The notes beneath the pieces are model-generated. The model searched no databases, was not told the origin of the DNA, and was given only the letters and a program-made list of their open reading frames with translations. A DNA stretch of 64,000 nucleotides, taken from IMG/VR virus record IMGVR_UViG_3300035698_018317, positions 62,001 through 126,000 of that record; one strand, written 5' to 3'. Positions 2,900 through 26,230 of the stretch are shown here, in pieces. Position 1 is the stretch's first letter. Each line of letters opens with the position of its first letter. The translations under genes were made by a program, and so were the position numbers.

Positions 2900-3928
2900 T
2901 CAAATTTCTTGAAGTTCTATTATTAAAGGGTCAAATTCCTCTTCGTATTCTTGAAGATAACGGTTGAGAACATTTGGTCCCAATTTAATCAACATTTCAT
3001 TCCAATCTTTATACTTTGTTGGTGGTTTTACATACTTTATTTTACCTTTGAAGCTCCCCATAGGTATTAAACCACCAATTTTTTTCATCGCATTTATACC
3101 GGCCTTATCGTTATCTAAGGCAATCACATGTTGATATTTTATCATAAAATATAATTGCGAATCATGAATTTCTTTTCCACCTAATGCGACCCCGTTTAAT
3201 CCTGCTGCACAGATAGCCAGTGCATCAAATTCACCTTCAGTAATGTAAATCTTGGCACCATCTTCAGGCCACCCTTTAGGCATATAAACTACGTCTTCTT
3301 TAGCTATCCCAGTTTTTTTATCCGGCCCCATATATTTCATGACATTCTTAGATTTTCCAAGGTATCTTCCATTGAAATATATTAATTTTCCATTTCTATC
3401 ATAATAAGGAATTATGATTCTATTTTTATAATCACCACCGACACATACATAAAACCCATCTATAGGAAGCTTTCTTTCTCTTAGGTGGATTTCTGCCGCA
3501 TTTCTAAAATAATCTCCCTCGGGTAAATCTTGAATGCGATAAGTCATCTCAGGAAAACTTATCTTATCTTCTTCTGGATTAGTTTCCACAATAACTTTGT
3601 GAGTCTTACTTTTACTTCGAGTCATTTCTTCGACTTGTTTTTCCATAGCAGCGAAAGTTAAGTCATATCCTTCCAAAATTTCTAATGCTTCATCAAAAGG
3701 ACAATTATCAACCTTCATAACAAGGGAAACTAGACTTCCTTTATTTCCCGTCTTCCAACAGTGATAAACACCATTGGCTCTCTCTTTCTTTCCGCCCTTA
3801 GTGTTACACCACATCTTGTGCTTATAATCTTCACAAAAAATAGAATTGACTTTGACTTCATCGCCCTTAAGGACAACATCGCCAAATCGACTCTCAACCC
3901 AACTAACAAATTTATCATGATTAATCAT
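2900..3928 (-). CDS. DNA primase (DnaG/gp61-like; Zn-binding domain plus TOPRIM)
   Basis: N-terminal C..H...HCWK Zn region; YFNGRY; TOPRIM ITEGEFDA and ALDNDKAG; KDWNE. Confidence 0.9.
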   Translation of the reverse strand: MINHDKFVSWVESRFGDVVLKGDEVKVNSIFCEDYKHKMWCNTKGGKKERANGVYHCWKTGNKGSLVSLVMKVDNCPFDEALEILEGYDLTFAAMEKQVEEMTRSKSKTHKVIVETNPEEDKISFPEMTYRIQDLPEGDYFRNAAEIHLRERKLPIDGFYVCVGGDYKNRIIIPYYDRNGKLIYFNGRYLGKSKNVMKYMGPDKKTGIAKEDVVYMPKGWPEDGAKIYITEGEFDALAICAAGLNGVALGGKEIHDSQLYFMIKYQHVIALDNDKAGINAMKKIGGLIPMGSFKGKIKYVKPPTKYKDWNEMLIKLGPNVLNRYLQEYEEEFDPLIIELQEI

Positions 3929-4024: not shown

Positions 4025-4801
4025 ATGAATATAACAGCTATAAGCGTTTCGAGAAAAAGTGTTTGGGACCAATGTACACAACTTTACAAGTATAAGTATC
4101 ATTTAAAAATTCCCCCACCGGGGCCAGAACCATTTTATTTTACATATGGTAAAATTGTTCATAAAATTGCAGAAGAATTTGTTTTAAGAAAAGGAAAAAC
4201 AGCCCTTGGAAAGGTTGCCTTAATGGTGCTTGAAGGAAAAATTCCTATGGACGCATATAATGGAGAATCTTTTTTTGCTCCACCTCTTCCTAAAGCATAC
4301 TCAAAAAGATTACCAGAACATATAGAGTCTATTGCTAAAATAACAAAACAATTAGGGACAAGTGGTATAGTAGAATATGAATTCTTGTATGATTTAGACC
4401 CGCCAAATAAGAAGAATGTAAGAGGGTTTATTGACCGTATTATAAAGAAAGATGATAACTATTTCATATTAGACTATAAAACAAGTAAAAAAGGCATATA
4501 CAGAAAAACCAGAAGTAATATTACATCTGATTTACAATTGAGAGCATATGCCAGAGTCATACAAAGAGAAAAAGATGTGCCTGCAAAGAATATTCATGCT
4601 GGTTTATATTACTTAGAAGGTGCAGATTTAGTTGGAGCAACATTTTCTGATAAATCTCTTAGACAAGCTGAAGAATCTTTGTTGTATACATACAAACAAA
4701 TAGAAAATACCCCAGAAGACAAAGCATGGGGAAATGTTGGTCGTCATTGCAGACGATGTGACTACGTAAAAAGATGTCCTTTTTATAGAATAACTAGCTA
4801 A
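4025..4801 (+). CDS. PD-(D/E)XK exonuclease, Cas4/AddB-like with Fe-S cysteines
   Basis: GFIDRI...ILDYKTS; one N-terminal Cys (DQC) plus C-terminal CRRC..KRC. Confidence 0.85.
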   Translation: MNITAISVSRKSVWDQCTQLYKYKYHLKIPPPGPEPFYFTYGKIVHKIAEEFVLRKGKTALGKVALMVLEGKIPMDAYNGESFFAPPLPKAYSKRLPEHIESIAKITKQLGTSGIVEYEFLYDLDPPNKKNVRGFIDRIIKKDDNYFILDYKTSKKGIYRKTRSNITSDLQLRAYARVIQREKDVPAKNIHAGLYYLEGADLVGATFSDKSLRQAEESLLYTYKQIENTPEDKAWGNVGRHCRRCDYVKRCPFYRITS

Positions 4802-8310: not shown

Positions 8311-8876
8311 TGACAGATGAAAAAAGAATCCAAAGAATAGAAGCATTAGTCGCACAATTCGCTAATCTAGAGGGCAACCCTTTAGATAATGCTCTTCGTT
8401 TAATTTCAACCTTACACACACCACCTCTTACTTATCGCTTTACGGAGAGACCGATGGGTTTTGGCATACAGTTTGATGCCAAGGTAGACGAGCTTTCAAT
8501 TGGTTATTCATATAATGAAGATGGAACAATCAATCAATGGACCAAAATTGAGAGATTTGGTGATACTCAGGAAGAAGCTAAAGCATCTTTAGATAATATG
8601 ATATCTAAACATTATTCTATAAAAAGAAAAATGGCCGCTGAAGGAGTATTAACCCCAATAGACCTAGAAGCATTTGATATTGAACATGGTTTAAAAGAAA
8701 AAATAACTTTTTCTGCTCAAGTATTATACAACGTAGGATTGGGTCCAGAATTCTTTGATATACCCAATATAGAAGCAATTAATGTTGATGATGCAAAAGT
8801 TGAAGCAAAAAAATTAGCAAATGAAAAATTTGGCGATGGCAATTGGATGGAAGTCAAAGTCAAACCTATTTCCTAA
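8310..8876 (+). CDS. Hypothetical protein
   Basis: ORF 8298..8876; probable start at 8310, coupled to the upstream stop. Confidence 0.6.
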   Translation: MTDEKRIQRIEALVAQFANLEGNPLDNALRLISTLHTPPLTYRFTERPMGFGIQFDAKVDELSIGYSYNEDGTINQWTKIERFGDTQEEAKASLDNMISKHYSIKRKMAAEGVLTPIDLEAFDIEHGLKEKITFSAQVLYNVGLGPEFFDIPNIEAINVDDAKVEAKKLANEKFGDGNWMEVKVKPIS

Positions 8877-10266
8877 TTTGATAATTTAATGGATTTGGAT
8901 GACTTCCATAGTGAGGAAGTCTCACAAATCGCAACCTATCAAGAGCAGTTATAGGCTTTTGTATTAGTTGGCCATATTTAGTTAGCATTAATGATTCTTC
9001 TATACCCGTCTTATCTCCGCCGCTAGGCTGGTTCCCAGTCAATATTCCGTTCAAAGTAAGACTTGATATTGTAGGAGTCTCAGACGTTACTGGAGGGGCA
9101 CCAGCATCATACAATGATTCTAATTGAGCAACAGACAATGGTGTATCCCAAATTGCCACTTCATCAATTACACCATTAAAGTAACCACGTTTAGTAGAAC
9201 CATTAGTCTGCATACTAGTAGCAAAAACTAATGGTTGACCAGAATACCAATCAGGGTCTTCCGTCATAGCCACAGAGCCATCCTCAACTGCATTAAGGTA
9301 TACCTTATGAGTAGAACCGTTGTAGATTATGGCAGCAAAATACCATGTGCCATTTTCAATAGTAGTAGCACCCGTAACAGGAACGTTCACACCATCCGAC
9401 AACTTTTCTGTATCGCCAGCTAATTTAACCCCAGATACCGTGTTAATACCAAGCATATAGTTAGCATTGATTCCAGCAGGAGATTCTTGCTCGGCACAAC
9501 CTTTGGATACTATCGGCTCAAAACTAGCAATGCCGCCATTACCCGTTGTGTCACCATCACCAGTGCCCGTTCTGTTAAACCAACAAGTAACAGTATATTG
9601 CTGACATCCCATTGCGGTTGGACCAGTTCTTGGAACTACCGCCTCTGCATTTTCTAACTGTATATAACTAGAACTGCCATTAAAAGTAGCAGCGGTATCA
9701 GCATCTCCAGATATTCCGCCAGCCGTTCCGAATGTCGTGCTGACCACATCTACACTATCATTGTTGTTAGCCGTTTCATCTATAACTTGGCTAGAACCGA
9801 GAGGCTCCCCAAGTCGCCAATACCCTTTGAGGTTGGCACTTTCTATAGCTTCAAGTATTGTTTGGTAGTCAGAACCACCACCGCCACCAATTCCTCTATC
9901 CAAATTAGCTAGTATCTGATTATATCGTCCATCTTCAAGTGCCGATATATCTAAATCATTGGCACCATCAGATAACACGACAGTCACAAAATCTTTTGAA
10001 GTAGACCCATTATCACTACTATGGACATCTACTTCTATTGATTGCCCATCAGTAATAGATGTCGTGACTTCAATCGTGGACCAATCAACTTCCTCTCCAG
10101 CATCGGCCCAACTAGAGGTGTATATCCCAGTATCAAATCCGCCTTCTACCCATATTTCACTAACCTCAACTTCATGCTGCGTGGTATTTCCTAAGTCATA
10201 TGCGGCACCCACAGCAATAGTTGTCGAAGTTGTGCCAATGAACCGTTGCCGCAAATTGACTCGCAT
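8866..10266 (-). CDS. LamG/concanavalin-like domain protein; probable C-terminal part of the frameshifted 13165 gene
   Basis: GYWRLGE...TFNGSSSY...WYFAAI...GVIDEVAIW LamG motifs; overlaps the end of the upstream ORF by 71 nt in the +1 frame. Confidence 0.75.
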   Translation of the reverse strand: MRVNLRQRFIGTTSTTIAVGAAYDLGNTTQHEVEVSEIWVEGGFDTGIYTSSWADAGEEVDWSTIEVTTSITDGQSIEVDVHSSDNGSTSKDFVTVVLSDGANDLDISALEDGRYNQILANLDRGIGGGGGSDYQTILEAIESANLKGYWRLGEPLGSSQVIDETANNNDSVDVVSTTFGTAGGISGDADTAATFNGSSSYIQLENAEAVVPRTGPTAMGCQQYTVTCWFNRTGTGDGDTTGNGGIASFEPIVSKGCAEQESPAGINANYMLGINTVSGVKLAGDTEKLSDGVNVPVTGATTIENGTWYFAAIIYNGSTHKVYLNAVEDGSVAMTEDPDWYSGQPLVFATSMQTNGSTKRGYFNGVIDEVAIWDTPLSVAQLESLYDAGAPPVTSETPTISSLTLNGILTGNQPSGGDKTGIEESLMLTKYGQLIQKPITALDRLRFVRLPHYGSHPNPLNYQIRK

Positions 10267-11167
10267 CAGAATATAATTCTACATTGGCGGGAGTGCTATC
10301 ATTTACAATGGCTTTGAAGTCTGGGCGGTCGCCAATAGAAAGCGTGGGTGTTCCAGTAACGGCAACACCAGCCCTAGTTCCGTCACAAAGACGCCATACG
10401 CCAGTTTTAGATATATTATTAGTGCCAACGTTATGCAGTTCTACGAGTTGAGTTGGCGTTAAAGCTTTATCCCAAATTGCAACTTCATCAATCACACCTT
10501 TGAAATAACCCTGCCTTGTGGTTCCATTAGTCCTAATGCAAGTACCAAAAGCTAATGGCTGACCAGAATAATAGTCAATGTCATTCGTAGCAGATATTGA
10601 CCCATCTTCTACGCCGTTTAAATAGACCTTATGAGTAGAACCGTCAAAGACAATAGCAGCAAAGTACCATGTGTCATCAACAATAGCGGTAGAACCTGTG
10701 ACTGGCTTATTTAAACCGCCAACCATTTCTTCTGTGTCACCAGCCAACAAAACCCCAGAACCCGTATTAAGTCCAAGCATGTAGTTGGCATTAACTCCAG
10801 CGGGAGATTCAGACTCGGCACAACCTTTAACCACCAAAGGTTCAAAACTGGCGATGCCACCACCGCCAGTTCCAGTACTAGTTCCACCGCCAACCGCCCT
10901 CTTGAACCAGCAAGTCACTGTATAATACTGAGCACCCATCGCAGTTGGTTCTGTTCTTGGTGCTGTTTCCGCATTTTCTATTTGAACGTAACTTGAACTT
11001 CCGTTAAATGTTGCAGCGGTATCAGCATCTCCAGATATTCCGCCAACCGTTCCGAATGTCATGTTAGCTAAAGCTACACTATCGTTATTATTAGCTGTTT
11101 CATCAATAACTTGACTAGCACCAGCACCCTCTCCAAGACGCCAATATCCTAATAAGTTGGCACTCTC
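9100..11167 (-). repeat. Duplicated LamG domain (about 9100-9843 and about 10424-11167)
   Basis: Two ~245 aa copies sharing long identical blocks (VIDETANNNDSV, GGISGDADTAATFNGSSSY, ESPAG.NANYMLG, GVIDEVAIWD). Confidence 0.85.
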
Positions 11168-13165
11168 AGTGTCGGTAACTGTCGTTTCATAATCGGGAGC
11201 ACCGCCTGAGCCTAGAAAATCTGAGCCTGCATATTCGTAGTGAGTTGTATCTTCATACCTATAAATAGCATTACGCATTCTAAATGCGTCATTACCTTCA
11301 GGGTCACCGCCAGCATCAACAAACGTGACTGTATAATCCGACAAGGCACTTTCTCCCGGTGGAAGATTCAACACAGCCAGTGCTTGGGCATAATCTACGC
11401 CTATTGGAGACTGCACCCACAAATAATCATTAGAGCCGGGAGTGTCAACAAAATTGATATCTCTCAAGCTCATTGTTCCGCCGTCGCCAGCAACCGCCCA
11501 AACAGCGGAATTATCTGACCATTTTAGATTCGCTAAGTCTTCATCGGTTACCGTTGAGAAATCTTGGTAATATCCGCAACCAACTACACCATCTTTAACG
11601 TACACTAGGTCACCAGAACCGTCTTCCCAATCAGTACCGCTAATCTCTCTAGAATATTCTGATAAGGTAGCTGTTTGGCTTGTTAATGATTGGAGTGTAC
11701 CGCCGCCTTGAAGTAGTTCAACTTCAAATTCATATTCAGGTTCAGTCAAGCCGCTAATAGCAGCCGGAATGTCTTGGTTGTCACCAGCAGTCTTCGCTTG
11801 ATAAGTTGTATACTGCCAAGCACCCGGAGAGGTATCACGATACCTAAATCTAACATCTCCAGCAGCTTGTAAGCTAACAGTAGAGTTGGCTGTAAATGAA
11901 GTAGATGTTGTATCTGTCGCCGCATCGGTTGCTAAAGCAACTAATTTTGAGGGGATGTCAGATGCAAAAATTTGTGTCGTTCCATCATTCTCTAAACACT
12001 GGTCGTGATAGCTAAGCCCATCAATTGTTAATATATCGCAATTTTGTCGCCCACTTGCTGATACTACATCATATCCATCGCCATCAATCCACCATTCGCC
12101 GATAGAGCCACCACTGAAAGTAGTATTACCCATCGGTCCATCGCCTAATTCTCTCAACCCTAAAGCATCTGTAGTAACATTACCAGCGCCAGAGGCGGTA
12201 GCCCAATCATCAATAGGCTGTCCTAATGTGGCGAAATGGTCATGCCCAGCATATGTGGATGATACACCATATTGCTGAAACAACGGACCCCATATGGTTC
12301 GAGCCTCAGAAGACCCAGATGCACCTAAACCATTTGACCCCGGCCATGCAGGATAGTGATAAGTTGCAATTATCCAGCGGAGAGTAGCATCTGTAGACGC
12401 TCTTATCAATGCATCTGTCAAGAACCCTAGCTGCCCATCCCAAGTAGTAGGATTTGTATAACTACCTTGGTCCCATTGCTCGATGTTACCACTATCTAGA
12501 CCAATGATTAAAACATCGCCAATTTGAACTTTCCAGTGGTATTGAGGCGTAAAGAAAGCATTAACATATTCTGGTGCGCTTCCCTCTAATTCATGGTTGC
12601 CTAAAATAGCCATAAGGGGAACTCTAAATCCAGTTGGAGTTACCCATTCGCCGCCTTGTCCGTCGCCCGATATGATGTCGAACATTTCTGTCCAGTGCGA
12701 AAGAGTGTTGCCATTATCGACCATATCACCACTATGGATGAGAACTAGTGGTTCCTTGGACATAGCCACAGTGGAAGTCAGACGGAAATCAGCCCTATAA
12801 GTAGCATTGAGGTTTATTTGAGCATCACTACCTTGAACAAATACCTTTTCACCCGCATAGCCAGCAGAGGGTGCAGTACGGAATTTTCTAACGGCACCAG
12901 CATCGCTTGATACTTTGAAGTAAAAGGTAGTATTTGCTGTCAGTCCAATTAATTTGGCGGTATGCACCCAACCACCTGCGAGGGCTTCAGAGGTACTATC
13001 AACATTAGAAGTTAGTGCGCCAGATGTAAGCCCATAGTCAACCTGAACAGGTTCAGCCTGCCCACTATCCCTCCACTTGACAATCATCTCAGTAGTAGGG
13101 TCAAAAGTAGCTGCCCCAGTCTGTGGCATCCACACCAACCATTGATATTCTAGAACTGAAGCCAT
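10196..13165 (-). CDS. Purple acid phosphatase-like metallophosphoesterase fused to Fn3-like and LamG domains (probable virion appendage protein)
   Basis: PAP N-terminal Fn3-like segment, then GSD, GDMVD, GNHE, YHYP, AGHDH; LamG near the C-terminus. Confidence 0.8.
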   Translation of the reverse strand: MASVLEYQWLVWMPQTGAATFDPTTEMIVKWRDSGQAEPVQVDYGLTSGALTSNVDSTSEALAGGWVHTAKLIGLTANTTFYFKVSSDAGAVRKFRTAPSAGYAGEKVFVQGSDAQINLNATYRADFRLTSTVAMSKEPLVLIHSGDMVDNGNTLSHWTEMFDIISGDGQGGEWVTPTGFRVPLMAILGNHELEGSAPEYVNAFFTPQYHWKVQIGDVLIIGLDSGNIEQWDQGSYTNPTTWDGQLGFLTDALIRASTDATLRWIIATYHYPAWPGSNGLGASGSSEARTIWGPLFQQYGVSSTYAGHDHFATLGQPIDDWATASGAGNVTTDALGLRELGDGPMGNTTFSGGSIGEWWIDGDGYDVVSASGRQNCDILTIDGLSYHDQCLENDGTTQIFASDIPSKLVALATDAATDTTSTSFTANSTVSLQAAGDVRFRYRDTSPGAWQYTTYQAKTAGDNQDIPAAISGLTEPEYEFEVELLQGGGTLQSLTSQTATLSEYSREISGTDWEDGSGDLVYVKDGVVGCGYYQDFSTVTDEDLANLKWSDNSAVWAVAGDGGTMSLRDINFVDTPGSNDYLWVQSPIGVDYAQALAVLNLPPGESALSDYTVTFVDAGGDPEGNDAFRMRNAIYRYEDTTHYEYAGSDFLGSGGAPDYETTVTDTESANLLGYWRLGEGAGASQVIDETANNNDSVALANMTFGTVGGISGDADTAATFNGSSSYVQIENAETAPRTEPTAMGAQYYTVTCWFKRAVGGGTSTGTGGGGIASFEPLVVKGCAESESPAGVNANYMLGLNTGSGVLLAGDTEEMVGGLNKPVTGSTAIVDDTWYFAAIVFDGSTHKVYLNGVEDGSISATNDIDYYSGQPLAFGTCIRTNGTTRQGYFKGVIDEVAIWDKALTPTQLVELHNVGTNNISKTGVWRLCDGTRAGVAVTGTPTLSIGDRPDFKAIVNDSTPANVELYSDASQFAATVHWHNFDNYCCGCRI

Positions 13166-13218
13166 TTAACACCTTTTAATTCTTTTGTTAATTTATCTTT
13201 CAACTATTACAATCGACC

Positions 13219-14139
13219 TTAAGGCGTAACTAAATCGCCTGCTTCAAGAGTGTATGGTTCTTCCGTTGTTTGTGTCGGCTGAAGGTTGGTATCAGCATTT
13301 CCTGCATATACATACGTAATTTTTCTTCCTAAATCACCTACAACTGCACCTGCGGGAAATTCTACAATTTCTCCGATTCTTTCAATAGCTCCTGCTGTAT
13401 TTGATAAAGTTATACTTTGGAAATTAAAGATTCCAGAACGGCCCCTTAACAGTTCGTAATCATCTTGAATTACGGTTCCGTCAAAGTTTAAACTAACTCC
13501 TTTGAAGTTTACTGCATTATTAACAACATTCAAGTCAACTGTGTTTGCAACAGTATCTAAAGGAACTATCATTCCTGTAGAATCGGCGAAGTCATCCCAC
13601 TGGTTTACTTCATGTCTACTAAAATAAGTTGGTAATTCAGACACACCCGCACGCCCATTGAATTGGAGAGCTTCTTCTGCTCTTCCATTTACAATATAAA
13701 ATTTCATTCTTGTAGCATCGAAATTAGAGCGAATCATTACTACACGGGTGCCTTCAGGAATCGAGTTGTCACCCGTGTTGGTTTGAATAAGAGCCGTAAA
13801 CATTGCAGTAAAGGCTACATCCGAATTTAATGCGGCAACTACTTCATCTGAGGTAGTTGCGGCGGAAAGAAGAGTAGGTGCTGTACCTACGACATCCATC
13901 GTCGCATATTGTCGTATGTTTGTATTAAATGCTGTGCGTATTTGCAATGTATCTCTAGAATTACCATCTACATCATTACCAGCAAAATTATACACTGGCG
14001 TAGGGGGTTGCCAAGACACAACTAAAGTCTCGCCTCTTCCGGCATTTCTAGGACATTTAAATGTAAGGCTTTGCTGGCGGTCGCCTAGCACCCAATTGCC
14101 TTGATAATCTTCAAAAAATGGATTTTGGAACCAACTCAT
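13219..14139 (-). CDS. Putative structural protein
   Basis: 306 aa, T/N/G/V-rich, upstream of the giant fibre-like gene. Confidence 0.5.
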   Translation of the reverse strand: MSWFQNPFFEDYQGNWVLGDRQQSLTFKCPRNAGRGETLVVSWQPPTPVYNFAGNDVDGNSRDTLQIRTAFNTNIRQYATMDVVGTAPTLLSAATTSDEVVAALNSDVAFTAMFTALIQTNTGDNSIPEGTRVVMIRSNFDATRMKFYIVNGRAEEALQFNGRAGVSELPTYFSRHEVNQWDDFADSTGMIVPLDTVANTVDLNVVNNAVNFKGVSLNFDGTVIQDDYELLRGRSGIFNFQSITLSNTAGAIERIGEIVEFPAGAVVGDLGRKITYVYAGNADTNLQPTQTTEEPYTLEAGDLVTP

Positions 14140-14169
14140 ATTGACCTCTCGTTTTATTCATTAAAAAAG

Positions 14170-14256
14170 GGTTACTTCAGTATCTATCTATTGAAGTAAC
14201 CTTATTTTATTTTATTATATGCAAAAAACGGTTACTTCAATGAAGTAACCGTTTTT
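14170..14256. repeat. Two inverted repeats sharing GGTTACTTCA/TGAAGTAACC arms
   Basis: 14170-14201: 10 bp arms with a 12 nt loop. 14224-14256: perfect 16 bp arms with a 1 nt centre. Confidence 0.85.
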
Positions 14257-14277
14257 AAGTTGAGAGTGTTTTTTACT

Positions 14278-14616: not shown

Positions 14617-15155
14617 GCTTTCTCCTTGTTAGTTAAAGTTAGTATATTATTAGCATGTTGTATGTCACAGAGGCGATAACTTCCATAATCTTCATTAAAA
14701 GGTTCTGCTTCATGTAACATATAATTTAATATTATATCAGGAATTGATTTAGGTTGCAATTGAAATTCTGGCATTTCGTGCTCTGCCATAACAAAATAAT
14801 TTTTTTTATCGTTTTTAAAGAAATCTACTTCCCACAGCCCATCTTTATGTTCGATATGGTATCGAGTTTTTATAAGTCGGGAATGAAAATTGGGTAAAAG
14901 GTCATTAAAATCTCTAGCGTCTATTTCTTTTTCTATTTCTACTAACCGATAAACACCATTTGATTTTACTTTGTGTTTAAAACAAAAAACATATTTTTCA
15001 GAATCTTTTATTTCTGTTTTTCTTATTCGGACAATATGACCATCCGCTTTAAGATATGCTTGCTGTATTTGCAAAACACAACTAGATTGAGCCAAAAACT
15101 CATTTTCTGGTGTATTTGGGCATAAGACTATTTTTTTCTCGTTCTCTGTCGGCAT
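14613..15155 (-). CDS. CYTH-domain (triphosphate tunnel) protein
   Basis: ENEKK (ExExK), VRIRK, EIEKEI, IKTRY, WEVDFF, MAEHE. Confidence 0.85.
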   Translation of the reverse strand: MPTENEKKIVLCPNTPENEFLAQSSCVLQIQQAYLKADGHIVRIRKTEIKDSEKYVFCFKHKVKSNGVYRLVEIEKEIDARDFNDLLPNFHSRLIKTRYHIEHKDGLWEVDFFKNDKKNYFVMAEHEMPEFQLQPKSIPDIILNYMLHEAEPFNEDYGSYRLCDIQHANNILTLTNKEKA

Positions 15156-16488
15156 TCTTTTGAATCCAATATTTTTCTAGAGCTATCTGAGTGCATCTTT
15201 CTTGGAATTGGGCACCTGTATCACCCGCTCCATTTTTTGCTATTTCGGCTATATGTTCTGGATAATCTTTTAAGATTCTTCCAGCTATCTTCACACGGCA
15301 TTTTTCTGTAAGCTCTTTTAATTCTAGTGCTCTGTCTATTCTTCCGGGTCGAGTTGAAATCTTAGTGCCATTTACAGCTTTATCTTTTCTAGGAACACCG
15401 ATTGCTTCATCAACATCTTCTATTTTATTTGTTGTTACTATTAGCATTACGCCGTCACAATTTTCTATTCCACCAATGCAATTTAGCAAACAGTCAAATG
15501 TTAATCCCCCTCCATATTCTCCAAGTTTATTATTTCTTCCTTCGAACACAGCATCTATATCTTCCATAAGAGCAACACATGGAGTATGGGTTTTCATTAA
15601 TTTCCACTTTTCTACAAGTTCTTCATTAGACATAGTGGAAAGGTCGAATGAATAAATTGGTAAATCTAAATCATATGCAACCGCTCGTACAAGAGATGTT
15701 TTTCCCGTACCCGGAGGCCCATAGAGCAACCAACCTCTTCGCCATTGGATTTGTTTTTCCTTATACCATTTTTCGGATTGTTTCCATTTTTTAGCTTCAT
15801 CAACAAATTCTTCTACTTCTGGAGGGAAAGCAAGTATTTCAAAAGCAGATTCATCAGAAAACACTTCTTGACCTATTTCTTGGATTCCCCATTTAAGAAG
15901 CCTTCTATTTCCTAAAACAAAACTATCTGAATTAGCTTCTGATTTGTCGGCAGTTGCTACAGGGTAGCCTTGGTCACCGCCGCCATGTCTTCTTTTAATG
16001 ATGGACCCAGACCCCGCTAAACGTCTTATTCGGAATCTTTCTTTAACTCCTGTTTTTGTTTTTTCATTAGCAAAACGAATAGCTCTGATAATTAATTCAT
16101 CTATATTAAATGTGCCACGAATATAAGTGATATTAATTGCACCATAAGCATCGTTATCATTACCTTTAATAGGAGGTCCAACTAGAACAGGTCGCCAACC
16201 TTTCAGAAAAATAGAACTTCTTTTCGAAAGTTCTTCGTATCCGATTCTTTCTGTTCTTCTATTGGGTTTCACATATTCAAAATAAGAACCAAAAGTTTTG
16301 CCGCCCATAGGTAGACGACGAAGCTTCTCAGAGCAATACGAAATAACGGCATCCGGCATTTCGCCTTCTATCTTTACTGTAACAACAAACAAACTAAATA
16401 TTTTAGAGACAAAATGTTTTATATATCTCCAAAATCCAGCAATAATACCTATTGCTGCTCCGCCTGCAAGCATCATGGGAACTTCCAT
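15100..16488 (-). CDS. BCS1-family AAA+ ATPase with N-terminal membrane anchor
   Basis: N-terminal hydrophobic helix; RRGWLLYGPPGTGKTS, MEDID, TFDCLLNCIGG, RPGRID. Confidence 0.8.
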   Translation of the reverse strand: MEVPMMLAGGAAIGIIAGFWRYIKHFVSKIFSLFVVTVKIEGEMPDAVISYCSEKLRRLPMGGKTFGSYFEYVKPNRRTERIGYEELSKRSSIFLKGWRPVLVGPPIKGNDNDAYGAINITYIRGTFNIDELIIRAIRFANEKTKTGVKERFRIRRLAGSGSIIKRRHGGGDQGYPVATADKSEANSDSFVLGNRRLLKWGIQEIGQEVFSDESAFEILAFPPEVEEFVDEAKKWKQSEKWYKEKQIQWRRGWLLYGPPGTGKTSLVRAVAYDLDLPIYSFDLSTMSNEELVEKWKLMKTHTPCVALMEDIDAVFEGRNNKLGEYGGGLTFDCLLNCIGGIENCDGVMLIVTTNKIEDVDEAIGVPRKDKAVNGTKISTRPGRIDRALELKELTEKCRVKIAGRILKDYPEHIAEIAKNGAGDTGAQFQERCTQIALEKYWIQKNADREREKNSLMPKYTRK

Positions 16489-16595: not shown

Positions 16596-18461
16596 ATGGA
16601 CGATATAAGCCAATTAGACGGAATGAGTCACGCAAAGAAGAAAGATGTTGCATTACCCGAAGAGAAGTTCGATTTGTTTTACAAGAAATTTGACTTTGTT
16701 AAGGATATTGTAGAAACAGATGAATGGAAGAAAATATATTCTAATTATTATGACTTTGACAAATCTGAATTAACCATAAAGATAAATGAACCTGAACATG
16801 AAATTGATTCATATGACGGTGAGAAACAAATATTAGAGATTATAAAATGTGTCAATAGTTTTTCATATTTTTGTCACAAATATGTAAAAATCAACCACCC
16901 AATTTATGGTTTGATTCCTTTCAAATTATATTCTTATCAAAAAAGAGTATATCAAGAATACACACAAAATAGATTCAACATTCTTAGCAAATTCCGTCAG
17001 GGTGGGCTAACAACCATGTCTGTACTGTGGTCTATGTGGAGATGTTTGTTCAGCACTGACCAACAAATCATGGTTATGTCCAAAACTGACCGTGAAGCTA
17101 TTGCCGCAGGCGAAATTGTTAAAAGAGCATTGGAACATTTACCAGCTTGGCTTAAATGCAACATGGGCAAAAATAATGACCATGAAAAAGAATTTAAATC
17201 AACAGGCTCAAAACTATCGTTCTATACACCTGAAGCTGCTCGTGGTAAATCCTGTACTTTACTTATAATTGATGAAGCAGCATTTATTCCAGATATGGAG
17301 AAACACTGGAAGTCCATGTATCCGGTTCTTGCAACTGGTGGAGCTTGCTGTGTTGTTTCTACAGTAAATGGTCTTGGTAACTGGTATGAAGAAATATATC
17401 ACGAAGCAGAAAATCATAAAAATGCATTTAATGTAATTGACCTAGATTTCTGGGAGCATCCAGAGTATAATGACCCAGTATGGGTTAAAGATACTAAATC
17501 AAACTTAGGAGAAAAAGGTTGGCAACAGGAAGTACTTCGTTCATTCTTGGGGTCAGGCGAAACATATATTTCTCCTAATATCATAGCGCAATTAGATAAG
17601 GAAACGAGAGATAGAAAACCAGTAAGAGCATTATTTGAGAAATGGACATCTATTGGAAGAGATAAAGATGAAGCTCTTGGAGTGGGTGCTTTATGGATAT
17701 TCCAAGAACCAATTGAGGGACACGAATATATTATTGGTGTTGATTCTGCTGAAGGTGTCGGTGAAGATGGTGATAATAGCGTGTTCCAAGTTTTGGACCA
17801 AGCTACATTAGAACAGGTTGCAGAATTTTATAGCAACACAGTACCGCCTCATGAATTTTCTCAAATTTTAAATGAAATGGGATATTGTTACAATACAGCA
17901 ATAATTGTTGTAGAAAATTTGGGAATTGGTTCTGCAATAATTAACTCATTAATTCATGACCTGTCTTATGAAAATATATTTTATGGTGGAAATAGGGGCA
18001 AACAACAACAACCCGGAATCAAAACCAATAAAACTAACAGGCCAGTTATTTTAGAGACATTACAGAATAGGCTTATCAATAATGTATTAAAAATAAATAG
18101 TCACAGATTTGTGGATGAATTAAAAACCTTTATCTTTAATTCAACAAGAAAAGCCGCTGAAGCACAAAAAGGAAAGCACGATGATGCTATAATGGCATTA
18201 AGTTTTGCTATACACGTTAGAGATTTGCAAATGCGTGATATCCCAATCGGTGCCGAATTGCCACAAGAAATGACGAATATATTTAAAAGTGAAATATACG
18301 AACAAATAAGACAAGAGATTAAAAAAGGCGCACCAGAAGATTGGCTTGCAGACGACGACGATGACGAGCCAATGTTTATTCCCAACGATGATGTGTTACC
18401 TCCTGTTTTATTCGACATTAATAGACCCAAAGATAAATTATTGAAAGAATTCGGATGGTAA
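16596..18461 (+). CDS. terL: Terminase large subunit (T4 gp17-like)
   Basis: KFRQGGLTT, LIIDEAAF, STVNG, IIGVDSA, HDDAIMA. Confidence 0.93.
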   Translation: MDDISQLDGMSHAKKKDVALPEEKFDLFYKKFDFVKDIVETDEWKKIYSNYYDFDKSELTIKINEPEHEIDSYDGEKQILEIIKCVNSFSYFCHKYVKINHPIYGLIPFKLYSYQKRVYQEYTQNRFNILSKFRQGGLTTMSVLWSMWRCLFSTDQQIMVMSKTDREAIAAGEIVKRALEHLPAWLKCNMGKNNDHEKEFKSTGSKLSFYTPEAARGKSCTLLIIDEAAFIPDMEKHWKSMYPVLATGGACCVVSTVNGLGNWYEEIYHEAENHKNAFNVIDLDFWEHPEYNDPVWVKDTKSNLGEKGWQQEVLRSFLGSGETYISPNIIAQLDKETRDRKPVRALFEKWTSIGRDKDEALGVGALWIFQEPIEGHEYIIGVDSAEGVGEDGDNSVFQVLDQATLEQVAEFYSNTVPPHEFSQILNEMGYCYNTAIIVVENLGIGSAIINSLIHDLSYENIFYGGNRGKQQQPGIKTNKTNRPVILETLQNRLINNVLKINSHRFVDELKTFIFNSTRKAAEAQKGKHDDAIMALSFAIHVRDLQMRDIPIGAELPQEMTNIFKSEIYEQIRQEIKKGAPEDWLADDDDDEPMFIPNDDVLPPVLFDINRPKDKLLKEFGW

Positions 18462-19804: not shown

Positions 19805-22306
19805 ATGCCTTTTTGGTCTGATTTATATAAATTATGGACGTATGCTTTTGAGAAAGACCCTCTTTCGAGAAGAACTGATGACTCTGGAATTTCTGGTGCT
19901 GGTGTTACACAGCCAGAAGCAATCCCAGACATTAGACAAGACGGAAGTTTTTGGGGTGGTGGTAAAGGTCTAGTACGTCTTCGAGATACGAACGATTTTA
20001 TTGACCTCTCTACCGTCTCAAACAGAAAGAGTAGATACAAAGAATACGAAAGATTAAGGAATGTTCCTGAAATAGAAACCGCCATGACTGTTTTTGCTGA
20101 CGAAGCATGTCTTGCGGGAGCAACAAAAATAGCTACAGTTGCCGAAGGCTTAGTTTCTATCCAGAAATTAGCTGAAACTAAAACAGAACCATTTTTGGTC
20201 TACTGCTGGGATTTTGAAAAAAATGATTACACAATAGGCTGGGCTTCTGACCCACGCTATGTGAAGACAGAGAAAACTATCAAAATCACATTAGATAATG
20301 GAAGATTTTTCAGATGTACCGTAGACCATCGTGTTTTGAGAAGAAACGGTAAATTTATAGAAGCAGGAAAAATAACAGAGGGTATGGAATTAATGCCTTT
20401 CTACAGAATCCCTGCTAATTATGAAAAAACTCAAATAAAAACAAAACAATTCCCAAGAATATTCACATTCACAGATGGCTGGAAGCACGAAAGACAATTT
20501 ATTGATGAATGGAGATTGGGACGTTCTATTGAAAAATATAAAGATGTAAATGCAGCTTGTCGGGCTTTAGCTGCTGGATTAACCACAAGACAAATAGCTA
20601 AAATAATGGGGCATCAATGGATTACCATAGATTCAAAGATAGCCAAAGAAGGATTTACCACTAGCGAAGTAAAATGGCTTGGTAAAAAAGAAGATGTAAG
20701 ACGTGTTATTGGTGTTCACAAAGACCGCACCGAAGACGTATACGATTTGTCAGTAGAAAAACATAAGAATTTCTGCGGCGACTCTTGTATTTTCCATAAT
20801 TGTCAAAGAGGCGATAATAATCACGTATTTGACATTATTTGTAAAGATAATGATGTCAAAAAAGAACTGGACTTTTTATTCTTCCATCGAAAAATGCTGA
20901 ACATGGATAGGAGAATTTGGAGTAGGTCAAAGAATCTCTTCATTATGGGAGATGAATTCTGGGAAATCGTTATTGACCCAGACAATCCAAAAGATGGTAT
21001 CTTAAAGATTCAAGAGTTACCTCCTGATAGTATGTTTAGAATTGAAACCACAAAAGGTAAACTTGTGGAATTCCAACAAGCTAAAGAAGGTCCAGATTAT
21101 CAGGCATTAACAAAAGCTCCGATACCTCAAGCTACAGAATCATCTATACAACAATCAAAAGCATTAAGGTTTACTCCAGACCAGATTGTTCATATGAAAA
21201 TTGGAGATGATAGAAAAACATTCTATCCATATGGTCAAAGTTTAGTAGAGCCAGCAAGAGGCCCAGCACACCAATTGCGTCTGATGGAGGATGCAATGGT
21301 CGTATACAGGCTCTCCCGTGCGCCTGAAAGAAGGGTGTTCTATATTGACGTTGGTAATCTTGCTCCCTATAAAGCAGAAGCTTTTATGGAAAGATTAAAA
21401 GACCAATTTAGAAAGAAAAAAGTTGCTGGTAGAACAGCAGGCACTTCAAGTGGTGCATCTGCTGTTGAAGAAAGATGGCACGCACGGGCGGCTGATGAAG
21501 ATTATTGGCTACCAATTCGTCCGAATGCCAATACCAGAATTGATACTCTCCCCGGAGCACAAAACTTGGGAGAGATTGATGATGCTGTATATTTTAGAAA
21601 TAAATTATTCACGGCTTTAAATTTCCCCAAAAATTACATGTCCAATGAAGATGTGCAAACAACAAGAATTGCTCTATCTGCACAGGATTGTAAGTTTGCA
21701 CGACTTGTTGAAAGATTACAAAGTCATATGGAAGATGGAATTTGGGCTGTTGCTGACCGTCATCTTAAACTACGTGGATTCCCAGAAGAAGCTTGGGAAG
21801 ACCTTATTATAAAATTAACTCCTCCTTCTGATTGGAGAGAGTTGAGTAGAGCAGAAGTTGTCTCGAATAGAATCAACAACGCAAATAGTTTAAAAGGTTC
21901 TATGCTGATGTCTGATTTTGATATCCTTACACAATGGATGAAATTAAATGAAGATGAAGCCCAAGATATGATGTCAAGGATGAAAGTTCAAAAACTTGAA
22001 GATATGAAACTTCAGGTGTTGGCACAGAATCCGCAGCTTCTAGGTGTGGGCGTTCCCGGCATAGGAGGACAAGAAGTTGGGGCTGAAGGGCCAAGTCAAA
22101 TGCCGCAACAACCACCTGAAGGTGCTGGCCCAGAAATGGGTGCGGAACCTCCGCAACAGCCCACTGAAGGTGGAGCACCAGCACCAGCTACATCAAGTGG
22201 AATCGCACTTCCAAAACCATCGACAGGTGACTTGAAGAAGTATGACCTACAAATTCAGACATATAGTAGCGAACAAGACCATGAAGACATAGATTTTAGT
22301 CTATAA
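19805..22306 (+). CDS. Portal protein (T4 gp20-like) with an intein
   Basis: QLRLMEDAMVVYRLSRAPERRVFYIDVGNL, EDYWLP, TLPGAQNLGEIDD, YFRNKLFTALNFP. Confidence 0.93.
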   Translation: MPFWSDLYKLWTYAFEKDPLSRRTDDSGISGAGVTQPEAIPDIRQDGSFWGGGKGLVRLRDTNDFIDLSTVSNRKSRYKEYERLRNVPEIETAMTVFADEACLAGATKIATVAEGLVSIQKLAETKTEPFLVYCWDFEKNDYTIGWASDPRYVKTEKTIKITLDNGRFFRCTVDHRVLRRNGKFIEAGKITEGMELMPFYRIPANYEKTQIKTKQFPRIFTFTDGWKHERQFIDEWRLGRSIEKYKDVNAACRALAAGLTTRQIAKIMGHQWITIDSKIAKEGFTTSEVKWLGKKEDVRRVIGVHKDRTEDVYDLSVEKHKNFCGDSCIFHNCQRGDNNHVFDIICKDNDVKKELDFLFFHRKMLNMDRRIWSRSKNLFIMGDEFWEIVIDPDNPKDGILKIQELPPDSMFRIETTKGKLVEFQQAKEGPDYQALTKAPIPQATESSIQQSKALRFTPDQIVHMKIGDDRKTFYPYGQSLVEPARGPAHQLRLMEDAMVVYRLSRAPERRVFYIDVGNLAPYKAEAFMERLKDQFRKKKVAGRTAGTSSGASAVEERWHARAADEDYWLPIRPNANTRIDTLPGAQNLGEIDDAVYFRNKLFTALNFPKNYMSNEDVQTTRIALSAQDCKFARLVERLQSHMEDGIWAVADRHLKLRGFPEEAWEDLIIKLTPPSDWRELSRAEVVSNRINNANSLKGSMLMSDFDILTQWMKLNEDEAQDMMSRMKVQKLEDMKLQVLAQNPQLLGVGVPGIGGQEVGAEGPSQMPQQPPEGAGPEMGAEPPQQPTEGGAPAPATSSGIALPKPSTGDLKKYDLQIQTYSSEQDHEDIDFSL
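20108..20800 (+). mobile_element. 231 aa intein in portal
   Basis: Starts CLAG; block B CTVDHRV; DVYDLSV; ends FHN followed by Cys(+1) at 20801. The flanks rejoin as FADEA-CQRGD. Confidence 0.92.
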
Positions 22307-25501: not shown

Positions 25502-26230
25502 ATGATAATGGAATTACTTCTGGAACATGATGTAACTCCGGGAACGAGTTATGATGAATGCCTGCTATATGGCGGGGGTGGATTCGTTCTCAACGAGGCC
25601 GTAAACCTCAATGAAGCAGCAGATGCGAGTGTTAAGACCGTTAAGTTTCGTGGAAAATTTCAAGAAGCTGACGCAGTTAACAAAAACAAAAGGTCGTACC
25701 CGTATAAGGTGCTCAATACCAATTTAACGAGACTTGAAGAAATGATGAACAGCGGGGGTCTGTGTGGTGAGTTAGACCACCCCACAGATTCCATTGTTCA
25801 CTTTGCCAATGCATCTCATAAAATTGTTAAACTCTGGTGGGAAGATAATGTCATGATGGGTGAAGGATATATCCTTAACACACCACATGGAAAAATTCTT
25901 CGTTCGCTCATCAATGATGGCGTAAGAATCGGAATTAGCAGTAGAGGCGTAGGCAACGGACAAGTCGATGAAAATGGTATACTTGTCATTGGGGAAAGTT
26001 ATAAATTGATAACATTTGATGCTGTTGCAGACCCAAGTACGCACGCAGCATTTCAGAAAAAAGTAACAAGTAGTACTCATGAAAGTGTCATGCCTACTAC
26101 CGTAATTGATAATAATTCTCAGAAAAATGAAGCCAGCAGCATAGATACCGTCAGCAAAGAGGTTCTATTAGCTTGCATCACTGGAATTGCGAACAGAACC
26201 ACTAATAAAATTAAAGCGAGGTTGAGCTAA
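25502..26230 (+). CDS. Prohead core protein protease (T4 gp21-like)
   Basis: NKNKRSY, GELDHP, GISSRGVG, FDAVADPS. Confidence 0.92.
   Translation: MIMELLLEHDVTPGTSYDECLLYGGGGFVLNEAVNLNEAADASVKTVKFRGKFQEADAVNKNKRSYPYKVLNTNLTRLEEMMNSGGLCGELDHPTDSIVHFANASHKIVKLWWEDNVMMGEGYILNTPHGKILRSLINDGVRIGISSRGVGNGQVDENGILVIGESYKLITFDAVADPSTHAAFQKKVTSSTHESVMPTTVIDNNSQKNEASSIDTVSKEVLLACITGIANRTTNKIKARLS

What the first reader, a model, noticed from the sequence alone, without database searches (positions are those of the whole stretch)
8866..13165. Purple acid phosphatase fused to tandem LamG domains in one giant fibre-like protein
Seen: an intact PAP metal-ligand set at the N-terminus, then Fn3-like/beta-rich spacers and two near-duplicate LamG domains. 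The region is visibly richer in G/C than its neighbours. Known: LamG domains bind glycans in receptor-binding proteins; PAPs hydrolyse phosphoesters. Inference: a virion appendage that binds surface glycan and removes phosphate from it, or scavenges phosphate.
Basis: partly seen in the sequence, partly recalled or inferred. Interest (0 to 1): 0.6.

Follow-up and report, generated by a model that had tools for sequence, protein, structure and literature searches.

The report
Split phage phosphoesterase–LamG accessory gene
A huge salt-lake phage carries a horizontally exchanged accessory gene for a long protein with a purple-acid-phosphatase-like enzyme head and two sugar-binding-type LamG modules, but here an 11-base deletion cuts it into two reading frames, and its place on the virion is still only inferred.

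Summary
The domains are real. On the minus strand there is a Pur_ac_phosph_N + Metallophos domain, and its model matches plant purple acid phosphatase (TM 0.71). Two Laminin_G_3 domains follow, 68-69% identical to each other.

- It is not one protein here. There are two overlapping ORFs: 10196-13165 (989 aa) and 8866-10266 (466 aa, +1 frame). An 11-nt deletion relative to an intact 1436-aa orthologue separates them. Contigs from three salt-lake runs reproduce the deletion exactly.
- The metal-ligand set is 6 of 7. The chromophoric PAP tyrosine is Asp150, and it is Asp or Glu in five of the six aligned clade members.

The extra G+C lies in codon positions 1 and 2, so it reflects amino-acid composition and does not mark foreign DNA.

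The gene sits in a ~6-kb variable island that is absent from the closest sequenced relative, a 595-kb huge phage. It is 82.5% identical in DNA to a copy in an otherwise very different phage, so it is an exchanged accessory gene. dN/dS is 0.11-0.16 on both sides of the break.

More distant clade members lie beside tail or neck-fibre genes. Virion display is therefore plausible, but it is not shown here.

The parts
10196..13165 (-). ORF1, 989 aa. Holds the PAP-like phosphoesterase (aa 1-~400), an unassigned beta-rich stretch (~400-690), LamG unit 1 (aa ~690-915) and the first part of the inter-LamG region. The last 24 codons (after aa ~965) are out-of-frame read-through caused by the deletion.
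11966..13165 (-). N-terminal Pur_ac_phosph_N + Metallophos domain (aa 1-400). Metal ligands are D114, D147, N190, H270, H308 and H310. Asp150 stands at the PAP tyrosine position.
   Evidence: Pfam. AlphaFold2 pLDDT 85, pTM 0.90. Foldseek best match is kidney bean PAP, E 2e-22, TM 0.71. Column counts. Profile alignment to wheat PAP.
10448..11002 (-). LamG (Laminin_G_3) unit 1
10196..10281 (-). Frame-break zone. The 11-nt deletion relative to the intact orthologue lies at about 10239. The +1-frame stop is at 10279-10281, the ORF2 ATG at 10264-10266 and the ORF1 stop at 10196-10198.
   Evidence: Contigs from runs X1, X2 and X3 span the site with no difference.
8866..10266 (-). ORF2, 466 aa. It returns to the ancestral frame from codon 10. 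It holds the rest of the inter-LamG region, LamG unit 2 (aa 197-381) and a tail of about 45 aa (from about 9025 down) that has no DNA similarity to the orthologue.
9124..9678 (-). LamG (Laminin_G_3) unit 2
8311..14277 (.). Variable island holding w8298 (+), the PAP-LamG gene (-) and w13219 (-). It lies between conserved genes w7699 and w14278. The closest relative, LR756511.1, has about 130 bp in this position.
13219..14139 (-). Co-oriented upstream gene of the island (306 aa, beta-rich, no family match)

Best explanation
This is a phage accessory gene, not a core gene, for a long beads-on-a-string protein.

Architecture:
- An N-terminal binuclear metallophosphoesterase with the plant-PAP fold. 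It belongs to a phage clade in which the PAP tyrosine ligand is usually a carboxylate.
- Unassigned beta-rich spacers.
- Two tandem LamG (concanavalin-like) modules.

Proposed mechanism (inferred): the LamG modules hold the protein on a carbohydrate or glycopolymer of the host envelope, while the metal centre hydrolyses phosphate ester bonds in that layer. The protein is most probably displayed on the particle as a fibre or decoration, as enzymatic tail or neck fibres are.

State in this genome: an 11-nt deletion splits the gene into ORF1 (enzyme + LamG1) and ORF2 (LamG2 + tail). The window therefore encodes either two separate products or a recently disabled gene.

Shown here: the domains, the ligand pattern, the split and its reproducibility, the insertion and exchange of the gene, and purifying selection.

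Inferred: catalytic activity, substrate, glycan binding and virion location.
For: - Domains and fold.
- Six metallophosphoesterase ligands are invariant in 55 homologues. Asp or Glu stands at the Tyr position in five of the six aligned clade members.
- An intact 1436-aa orthologue exists on three contigs that are 99.8% identical to each other.
- The 11-nt deletion is seen identically in contigs of three runs from different samples.
- dN/dS is 0.11 for the ORF1 part and 0.155 for the ORF2 part, with no further stops in 457 codons.
- The island is absent at the syntenic site of LR756511.1.
- The gene is 82.5% identical in DNA to L003/L017. The rest of those contigs shares only a few genes with this genome, at 35-57% aa identity.
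- Fibre context in other members of the same PAP clade:
  - P0014 lies two genes after a 'central tail fiber J' homologue, among proteins of 1-2.4 thousand aa that include a LamG+Kelch protein.
  - P0017 (PAP+LamG) lies between two Gp80 neck-fibre-family genes (the meaning of Gp80 comes from bioRxiv 10.64898/2026.02.14.705889).
- Fibre context in a fold relative: phage G gp352, the best viral fold match but not a sequence-clade member, combines a weak Mtd_N match with the PAP domains and precedes a 2055-aa LamG protein.
- There is no signal-peptide-like N-terminus, and all six clade members share the start MSSxVxYKWLLW.
Against: - No virion proteomics or structure is available.
- No recognisable virion-anchor or trimerisation domain was found.
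- In the two closest contexts (this window and L017) the neighbours are replication, packaging or small unknown genes, not tail genes.
- The gene is broken here.
- The Tyr-to-Asp change and the loss of the family's Y-K-R-T motif after GHDH could mean altered or lost activity.
- The preprint on Anabaena phages found phoD beside neck-fibre genes but transcribed independently, and read it as a metabolic gene.
Confidence: 0.45

Rival explanations
1. It is a non-structural auxiliary enzyme for phosphate scavenging. The protein is made during infection and acts in the cell or after lysis to free phosphate from organic esters. The LamG units only tether it to cell debris or polymers, and it is not part of the particle.
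For: - PAP and PhoD enzymes are phosphate-scavenging enzymes.
- Phage phoD is reported as a highly expressed accessory gene whose carrier phage responds to phosphate supply (bioRxiv 10.64898/2026.02.14.705889).
- The gene lies in accessory, non-tail surroundings here and in L017.
- Bacterial secreted proteins also combine LamG with metallophosphoesterase domains. P0011 has both by Pfam. P0004, P0005 and P0007 show phosphoesterase motifs by eye, and P0007 carries PF18962 (read here, from memory, as a secretion-sorting domain).
Against: - There is no signal peptide, so export would depend on lysis.
- A 1436-aa multi-module protein is costly for a soluble scavenger.
- More distant clade members sit in fibre-gene clusters.
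Confidence: 0.25
2. In this genome the locus is simply a dying gene. The 11-nt deletion abolished function, ORF2 is not translated, and the open frame downstream only reflects how recent the event is.
For: - The frameshift is real and fixed in the sampled population.
- There is no Shine-Dalgarno-like motif before the ORF2 ATG, whereas ORF1 has AAGGTG.
- The break falls inside the region between the LamG units.
- The 3' end has also been replaced relative to the orthologue.
Against: - ORF1 still encodes the complete enzyme and one LamG unit, and could work alone.
- dN/dS downstream of the break is as low as upstream, and there is no second lesion.
- The split allele recurs in runs released 2017-2019.
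- Many genes of this phage lack a Shine-Dalgarno motif anyway.
Confidence: 0.2
3. The two frames are joined by programmed +1 ribosomal frameshifting, so the giant protein is still made.
For: ORF2 is in the +1 frame and overlaps ORF1 by 71 nt.
Against: - The orthologue is in one frame with 11 extra bases. The offset is therefore a lineage-specific deletion and not a conserved recoding site.
- I saw no known +1 slippery motif (such as the prfB type) in the overlap.
Confidence: 0.03

Closest known systems
Plant-type purple acid phosphatases (kidney bean, sweet potato, wheat phytase PAPs; Pfam Pur_ac_phosph_N + Metallophos)
   Same: The same two-domain fold: an Fn3-like N-domain plus a metallophosphoesterase core (Foldseek TM 0.71, E 2e-22; profile E 1e-55). 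The five motif blocks and six of the seven metal ligands are kept.
   Different: - The tyrosine that binds Fe(III) and gives the colour is Asp150.
- Motif I is SDAQ instead of GDxG.
- There is no signal peptide.
- About 1000 further residues, including two LamG modules, are fused on.
- It is phage-encoded.
Phage-encoded PhoD next to neck-fibre genes in Anabaena cyanophages A-Lf14, A-Alj1 and A-Hlh1 (bioRxiv 10.64898/2026.02.14.705889)
   Same: A phosphatase of the same structural superfamily, carried as a variable accessory gene of a myophage and repeatedly placed beside fibre genes.
   Different: That enzyme is PhoD-type, stand-alone, reported as transcribed independently of the fibre genes, and interpreted as metabolic. 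Here the enzyme is PAP-type and covalently fused to LamG modules.
Bacillus phage G gp352 / gp353
   Same: gp352 is the best viral fold match (TM 0.69) and has Pur_ac_phosph_N + Metallophos. The next gene, gp353, is a 2055-aa LamG-containing protein. The same two parts therefore occur as neighbouring genes.
   Different: - The order is reversed within gp352: a fibre-like N-terminus (weak Mtd_N match, LTD) comes first and the enzyme last.
- LamG is on a separate protein, together with CotH and LRR.
- Only 15% sequence identity.
Enzymatic tail fibres and spikes of phages (depolymerases; wall-teichoic-acid-degrading appendages such as phi29 gp12; glycerophosphodiesterase domains of staphylococcal myophage baseplates). 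These examples are from my own knowledge.
   Same: The logic of a binding module plus an envelope-degrading enzyme on one virion appendage. Phosphodiester-cleaving examples exist.
   Different: Those use other folds (beta-helix, GDPD). Virion location is demonstrated for them and not for this protein. I found no report of a PAP-fold enzyme in such a role.
Bacterial secreted LamG + metallophosphoesterase proteins (P0011; also P0004, P0005, P0007)
   Same: They combine several Laminin_G_3 units with a metallophosphoesterase domain in one extracellular protein.
   Different: The domain order is the opposite (LamG first). They have signal or sorting sequences. Their phosphoesterase domain belongs to another subfamily. 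They resemble the query only through the LamG part (17-28% of the query covered).

Membership tests
Purple acid phosphatase (PAP) | N-terminal Fn3-like domain followed by a metallophosphoesterase core | tested here: met
   Pfam scores are above the curated cut-offs. The AlphaFold2 model (pLDDT 85) matches kidney bean PAP at TM 0.71.
Purple acid phosphatase (PAP) | Seven invariant metal ligands: D, D, Y, N, H, H, H | tested here: not met
   D114, D147, N190, H270, H308 and H310 are present. The Tyr column holds Asp150, and Asp or Glu in the nearest phage relatives.
Purple acid phosphatase (PAP) | Fe(III)-tyrosinate chromophore, acid pH optimum, phosphomonoesterase activity | not testable with these tools
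   Needs purified protein. The missing Tyr predicts no purple colour.
LamG / Laminin_G_3 (concanavalin-like jelly roll) | Profile match over the whole domain | tested here: met
   68.2 and 65.1 bits against a cut-off of 27.6, covering profile positions 2-149 of 151.
LamG / Laminin_G_3 (concanavalin-like jelly roll) | Binding of a carbohydrate or other ligand | not testable with these tools
My structure run for LamG2 failed.
Phage tail fibre / receptor-binding protein | Gene lies in the tail or fibre module | tested here: not met
   In the window it lies between primase/exonuclease genes and the terminase-portal-capsid module, inside a variable island. The feature is met only for distant relatives: clade members P0014 and P0017, and fold relative phage G gp352.
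Phage tail fibre / receptor-binding protein | Recognisable virion-attachment or trimerisation domain | tested here: not met
   No Pfam or PHROG structural match outside the enzyme and LamG domains. The terminal segments share nothing with other genes of the 225-kb record.
Phage tail fibre / receptor-binding protein | Presence in purified virions | not testable with these tools
   No proteome exists for this uncultured phage. I found no statement on phage G gp352 in the two papers read.
Programmed ribosomal frameshift gene | Frame offset and slippery site conserved in orthologues | tested here: not met
   The orthologue is in a single frame. The offset is an 11-nt deletion.
Auxiliary phosphate-scavenging gene of phages (phoA / phoD type) | Stand-alone phosphatase under phosphate-responsive expression | not tested
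   The enzyme class is compatible, but the protein is a multi-module fusion. Expression could not be examined because no RNA runs hold it.

The most novel reading that the evidence does not exclude
PAP- and PhoD-fold phosphoesterases, fused to or encoded next to LamG and fibre modules, form an unrecognised class of virion-displayed enzymes. Phages would use them to cut phosphate-ester links in host surface polymers, as a phosphoesterase counterpart of glycan depolymerases. The examples seen here are this gene, P0017 between neck-fibre genes, P0014 after a J-like fibre gene, phage G gp352/gp353, and a T7-like contig in which PhoD is fused to tail tubular protein A (L014). These genes would be exchanged between unrelated phages of one habitat.
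Probability: 0.2. Interest if true: 0.65.

Novelty: new variant of a known kind. Interest (0 to 1): 0.42.

Why it matters
If the intact protein sits on the particle and is active, it would add a new enzyme fold, the PAP-type binuclear phosphoesterase, to the set of tools phages carry on their appendages. It would also point to phosphate-ester-linked envelope polymers as targets or receptors in salt-lake hosts.

The recurring pairing of PAP/PhoD enzymes with fibre genes also bears on how such genes are annotated. They are currently called metabolic 'auxiliary' genes by default, and some may be structural.

For this window the practical lessons are more modest. The gene is split, so it should be annotated as two ORFs or a disrupted gene. 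The ligand set is not that of a true purple enzyme. The G+C rise is a composition effect.

Tried and rejected
- AlphaFold2 on the orthologue's aa 905-1436 (inter-LamG region, LamG2 and tail) with a 6-row alignment gave pLDDT 34 and is unusable. The fold of the spacers, and whether the break cuts a folded domain, therefore remain open.
- A three-row alignment of the whole C-terminal part was misaligned by the repeat and was not used.
- Pfam at E up to 1 on the spacers and tails found nothing useful.
- ESM Atlas look-alikes for aa 400-690 and for the upstream gene w13219 stayed below meaningful scores.
- tblastn of the whole protein against 50,697 phage records found only a LamG hit in a Nitrosopumilaceae virus. 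The word search with ORF2 gave 4 weak LamG hits.
- Foreign origin inferred from G+C was rejected by the codon-position analysis.
- A diversity-generating retroelement acting on the LamG units was rejected. The record has no reverse transcriptase, and the variant sites seen in reads are not adenine-specific.
- Flanking direct repeats or a transposase at the island borders: none found, only hairpin repeats at 14162-14261.
- Promoter and terminator scans were at or below chance.
- The larger record behind L017 could not be searched because it is not held.
- Literature searches for PAP or metallophosphoesterase on phage fibres, phage G gp352 and the phage Idefix virion phosphoesterase returned nothing usable. 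No supplement was held for the phage G paper.
- No complex prediction was run, since no binding partner is proposed.
Full report
**What the window is**

The window is bases 62001-126000 of a 225,284-bp IMG/VR virus record, estimated 44% complete. It carries a T4-type packaging and head module:
- large terminase at 16596-18461;
- portal at 19805-22306, with an intein-like insert;
- prohead protease at 25502-26230;
- gp23-type major capsid protein at 27183-28622.

To the left lie a primase (2900-3928) and an exonuclease (4025-4801). The capsid protein is 78% identical to that of LR756511.1, an uncultured 595-kb phage. The finding's stretch is held by runs labelled salt lake metagenome.

**Checking the observation**

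On the minus strand the interval 8866-13165 is fully coding, but as two ORFs. ORF1 is 10196-13165 (989 aa, P0001). ORF2 is 8866-10266 (466 aa, P0002). They overlap by 71 nt, and ORF2 is in the +1 frame.

Pfam places these domains:
- Pur_ac_phosph_N at aa 23-97 of ORF1;
- Metallophos at aa 136-310 of ORF1;
- Laminin_G_3 at aa 722-906 of ORF1;
- a second Laminin_G_3 at aa 197-381 of ORF2.

The two LamG units, with the ~40-residue linker before each, are 68-69% identical and lie 1324 nt apart. The G+C rise is real, 0.44 against about 0.35.

**The split**

The word search found a 1436-aa protein (P0003) that is 86% identical and covers both ORFs in one frame. A DNA alignment with its contig (L003) shows that the window lacks 11 nt directly after ...GCAACGGTT, near position 10239. 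The site is not a homopolymer.

Logan contigs from three runs of different samples span the site with no difference and no gap:
- X1, 9999-10563;
- X2, 9704-10581;
- X3, 10227-10377.

The deletion is therefore a property of this phage population and not an assembly slip. One of these runs may be the source sample.

The intact allele occurs on three contigs that are 99.8% identical to each other: L003, L017 (from a 73.9-kb contig) and L018. A loose end in run X4 at 10347 matches that allele, so both lineages live in the same system.

Because the orthologue is in a single frame, programmed frameshifting is unlikely. The repeat spacing of 1324 nt (3n+1) becomes 1335 nt (3n) once the 11 nt are added back. 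ORF1 has an AAGGTG motif before its start and ORF2 has none, but many genes of this phage also lack one.

The last ~45 residues of ORF2 (after the shared NQPSGG motif) and the last ~50 of the orthologue share no DNA similarity.

**The enzyme domain**

An exhaustive HMMER search with aa 1-420 found 1814 relatives at E ≤ 0.001. A 55-sequence alignment gave an AlphaFold2 model with pLDDT 85 and pTM 0.90.

Foldseek places the model with plant purple acid phosphatases (kidney bean PAP, E 2e-22, TM 0.71). It scores ahead of mammalian PAP, PhoD, Rv0805, GpdQ and SMPDL3.

D114, D147, H270 and H310 are invariant in the alignment. N190 and H308 are nearly so. The profile aligns its 'GDlvY' block to the PAP 'GDVSY' block. 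In that column the window has Asp150.

The nearest relatives (L003, L008, L009) also have Asp there, and P0012 has Glu. Tyr occurs in only 16 of the 55 sequences. Motif I reads SDAQ. The family's Y-K-R-T motif after GHDH is replaced by A-T-L-G.

The domain therefore has the PAP fold with a complete generic binuclear site, but it is not a true 'purple' enzyme. Whether Asp150 binds metal could not be checked, because model coordinates are not exposed.

**A phage clade**

The best hits after the orthologue all begin at residue 1 with the same N-terminus, MSSxVxYKWLLW. They have no signal peptide and carry long C-terminal extensions:
- P0013, 945 aa;
- P0014, 1667 aa;
- P0015, 1145 aa;
- P0017, 1070 aa, again ending in LamG;
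- P0012, the exception, a stand-alone 364-aa protein.

Their host contigs range from 34% to 63% G+C.

**Genomic context of relatives**

Clade members:
- P0014 lies two genes after a 1238-aa homologue of the central tail fibre J (phrog_31, E 3e-15). It sits in a row of proteins of 1-2.4 thousand aa that includes a LamG+Kelch protein.
- P0017 lies between two genes of the Gp80 family. A 2026 preprint describes Gp80-Gp82 as forming the bead-chain neck fibres of cyanophage A-1(L). The same preprint reports phoD always adjacent to neck-fibre genes in three Anabaena phages, although transcribed separately and read as a metabolic gene.

Fold or superfamily relatives outside the sequence clade:
- Phage G gp352 is the best viral fold match (TM 0.69). 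It combines a weak Mtd_N match and an LTD domain with the PAP domains. It is followed by gp353, a 2055-aa LamG+CotH+LRR protein.
- In IMG/VR, a T7-like contig has one ORF joining PhoD_N+PhoD to the tail tubular protein A domain (L014). Another has PhoD about 6 kb from a Phage-tail_3 protein (L015).

These cases make a virion role plausible for the wider group.

**Context in this genome**

tblastx against LR756511.1 gives clean synteny on both sides: w2900, w4025, w6253 and w7699 on the left, and w14278, w14613, terminase, portal and capsid on the right. The relative has about 130 bp where the window has about 6 kb containing w8298, the PAP-LamG gene and w13219. That relative has no homologue detectable by tblastn.

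In L003/L017 the gene has different neighbours: small unknown ORFs, a polynucleotide-kinase-like ATPase and a TnpB. Those contigs share only a few genes with this genome, at 35-57% aa identity, yet the gene itself is 82.5% identical in DNA. This points to exchange of the gene between distantly related phages of one habitat.

The G+C excess does not bear on this. GC3 is 0.30-0.33, inside the genome's range of 0.21-0.45. The excess is in positions 1 and 2, as expected for a protein rich in Gly, Ala, Thr and Ser. The capsid gene is equally G+C-rich.

**Selection**

Between the window and L003, dN/dS is:
- 0.097 for the enzyme;
- 0.094 for aa 400-690;
- 0.159 for LamG1;
- 0.155 for the part downstream of the break (0.134 for the inter-LamG part and 0.120 for LamG2).

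Both halves were therefore under purifying selection for most of their divergence. The deletion is either recent, or ORF2 is still used.

Orthologous LamG units are more alike (82-88%) than the two units within one gene (68-69%), so the duplication predates the split between the two lineages.

**Interpretation**

The architecture, the lack of a signal peptide and the fibre-gene company kept by distant relatives favour a surface-binding phosphoesterase carried on the particle.

Three points stand against this:
- the accessory, non-tail location of the two closest copies;
- the absence of any anchor domain;
- the break in this genome.

I give the appendage model 0.45, a non-structural scavenging enzyme 0.25, a dead gene in this genome 0.2 and recoding 0.03.

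**What failed**

The spacer and C-terminal folds could not be obtained. No literature on PAP-fold enzymes on phage fibres was found.

No genetic code other than table 11 was used.

Noticed in passing
window 19805-22306 (+): The T4-type portal gene carries an Intein_splicing match at aa 154-332 (41.9 bits, cut-off 35.8). The region also aligns with LR756511.1, so the insert seems to be shared.
   Followed up: no
window 15100-16488 (-): The AAA ATPase gene next to the terminase has no counterpart between the syntenic genes of LR756511.1. This is a second variable slot beside the PAP-LamG island.
   Followed up: partly
window 14162-14261: A cluster of near-perfect palindromes (AAAAACGGTTACTTCA / TGAAGTAACCGTTTTT, several copies) lies in the intergenic gap at the right border of the island. 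They could be terminators or a recombination or regulatory repeat.
   Followed up: partly
L014 6806-9559 (IMG/VR UViG_3300005468_000095): In a T7-like contig (T7-type portal and Gp10A-like capsid), one open frame joins PhoD_N + PhoD phosphatase to the tail tubular protein A (Tube) domain. This physically fuses a PAP-superfamily enzyme to a tail protein.
   Followed up: partly
L016 9583-18353 (Bacillus phage G gp352, gp353): gp352 has a weak Mtd_N match, LTD, Pur_ac_phosph_N and Metallophos. The adjacent gp353 (2055 aa) has LamG, a CotH kinase domain and LRR. The parts that are fused in the window occur here as neighbouring genes.
   Followed up: partly
window 9689 / 11012 (run X4): One contig joins 11012 back to 9689, exactly one LamG repeat unit (1324 nt), with 33 shared letters. 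It is either a three-unit variant or a de Bruijn artefact across the repeat.
   Followed up: no
window 9205-9372 and 10552-10703: Short contigs of much higher depth (13-26x against 3-6x) with 15-16 differences cover the conserved LamG cores. Other, more abundant carriers of related LamG units live in the same lakes.
   Followed up: no
L011 3267-6071, L012 2209-5013: The stand-alone 364-aa member of the PAP clade (P0012) lies directly after a WGR + PARP gene on two contigs.
   Followed up: no
window 9124-9678 and 10448-11002: Synonymous divergence from the orthologue is lower in both LamG units (dS about 0.5) than elsewhere in the gene (0.73-1.4). This is possibly gene conversion between units, or recombination.
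   Followed up: no
L003 12070-13116 / L017 10822-11967: An IS605 OrfB/TnpB-type gene lies about 1 kb downstream of the intact allele. There is no evidence that it moved the gene.
   Followed up: no
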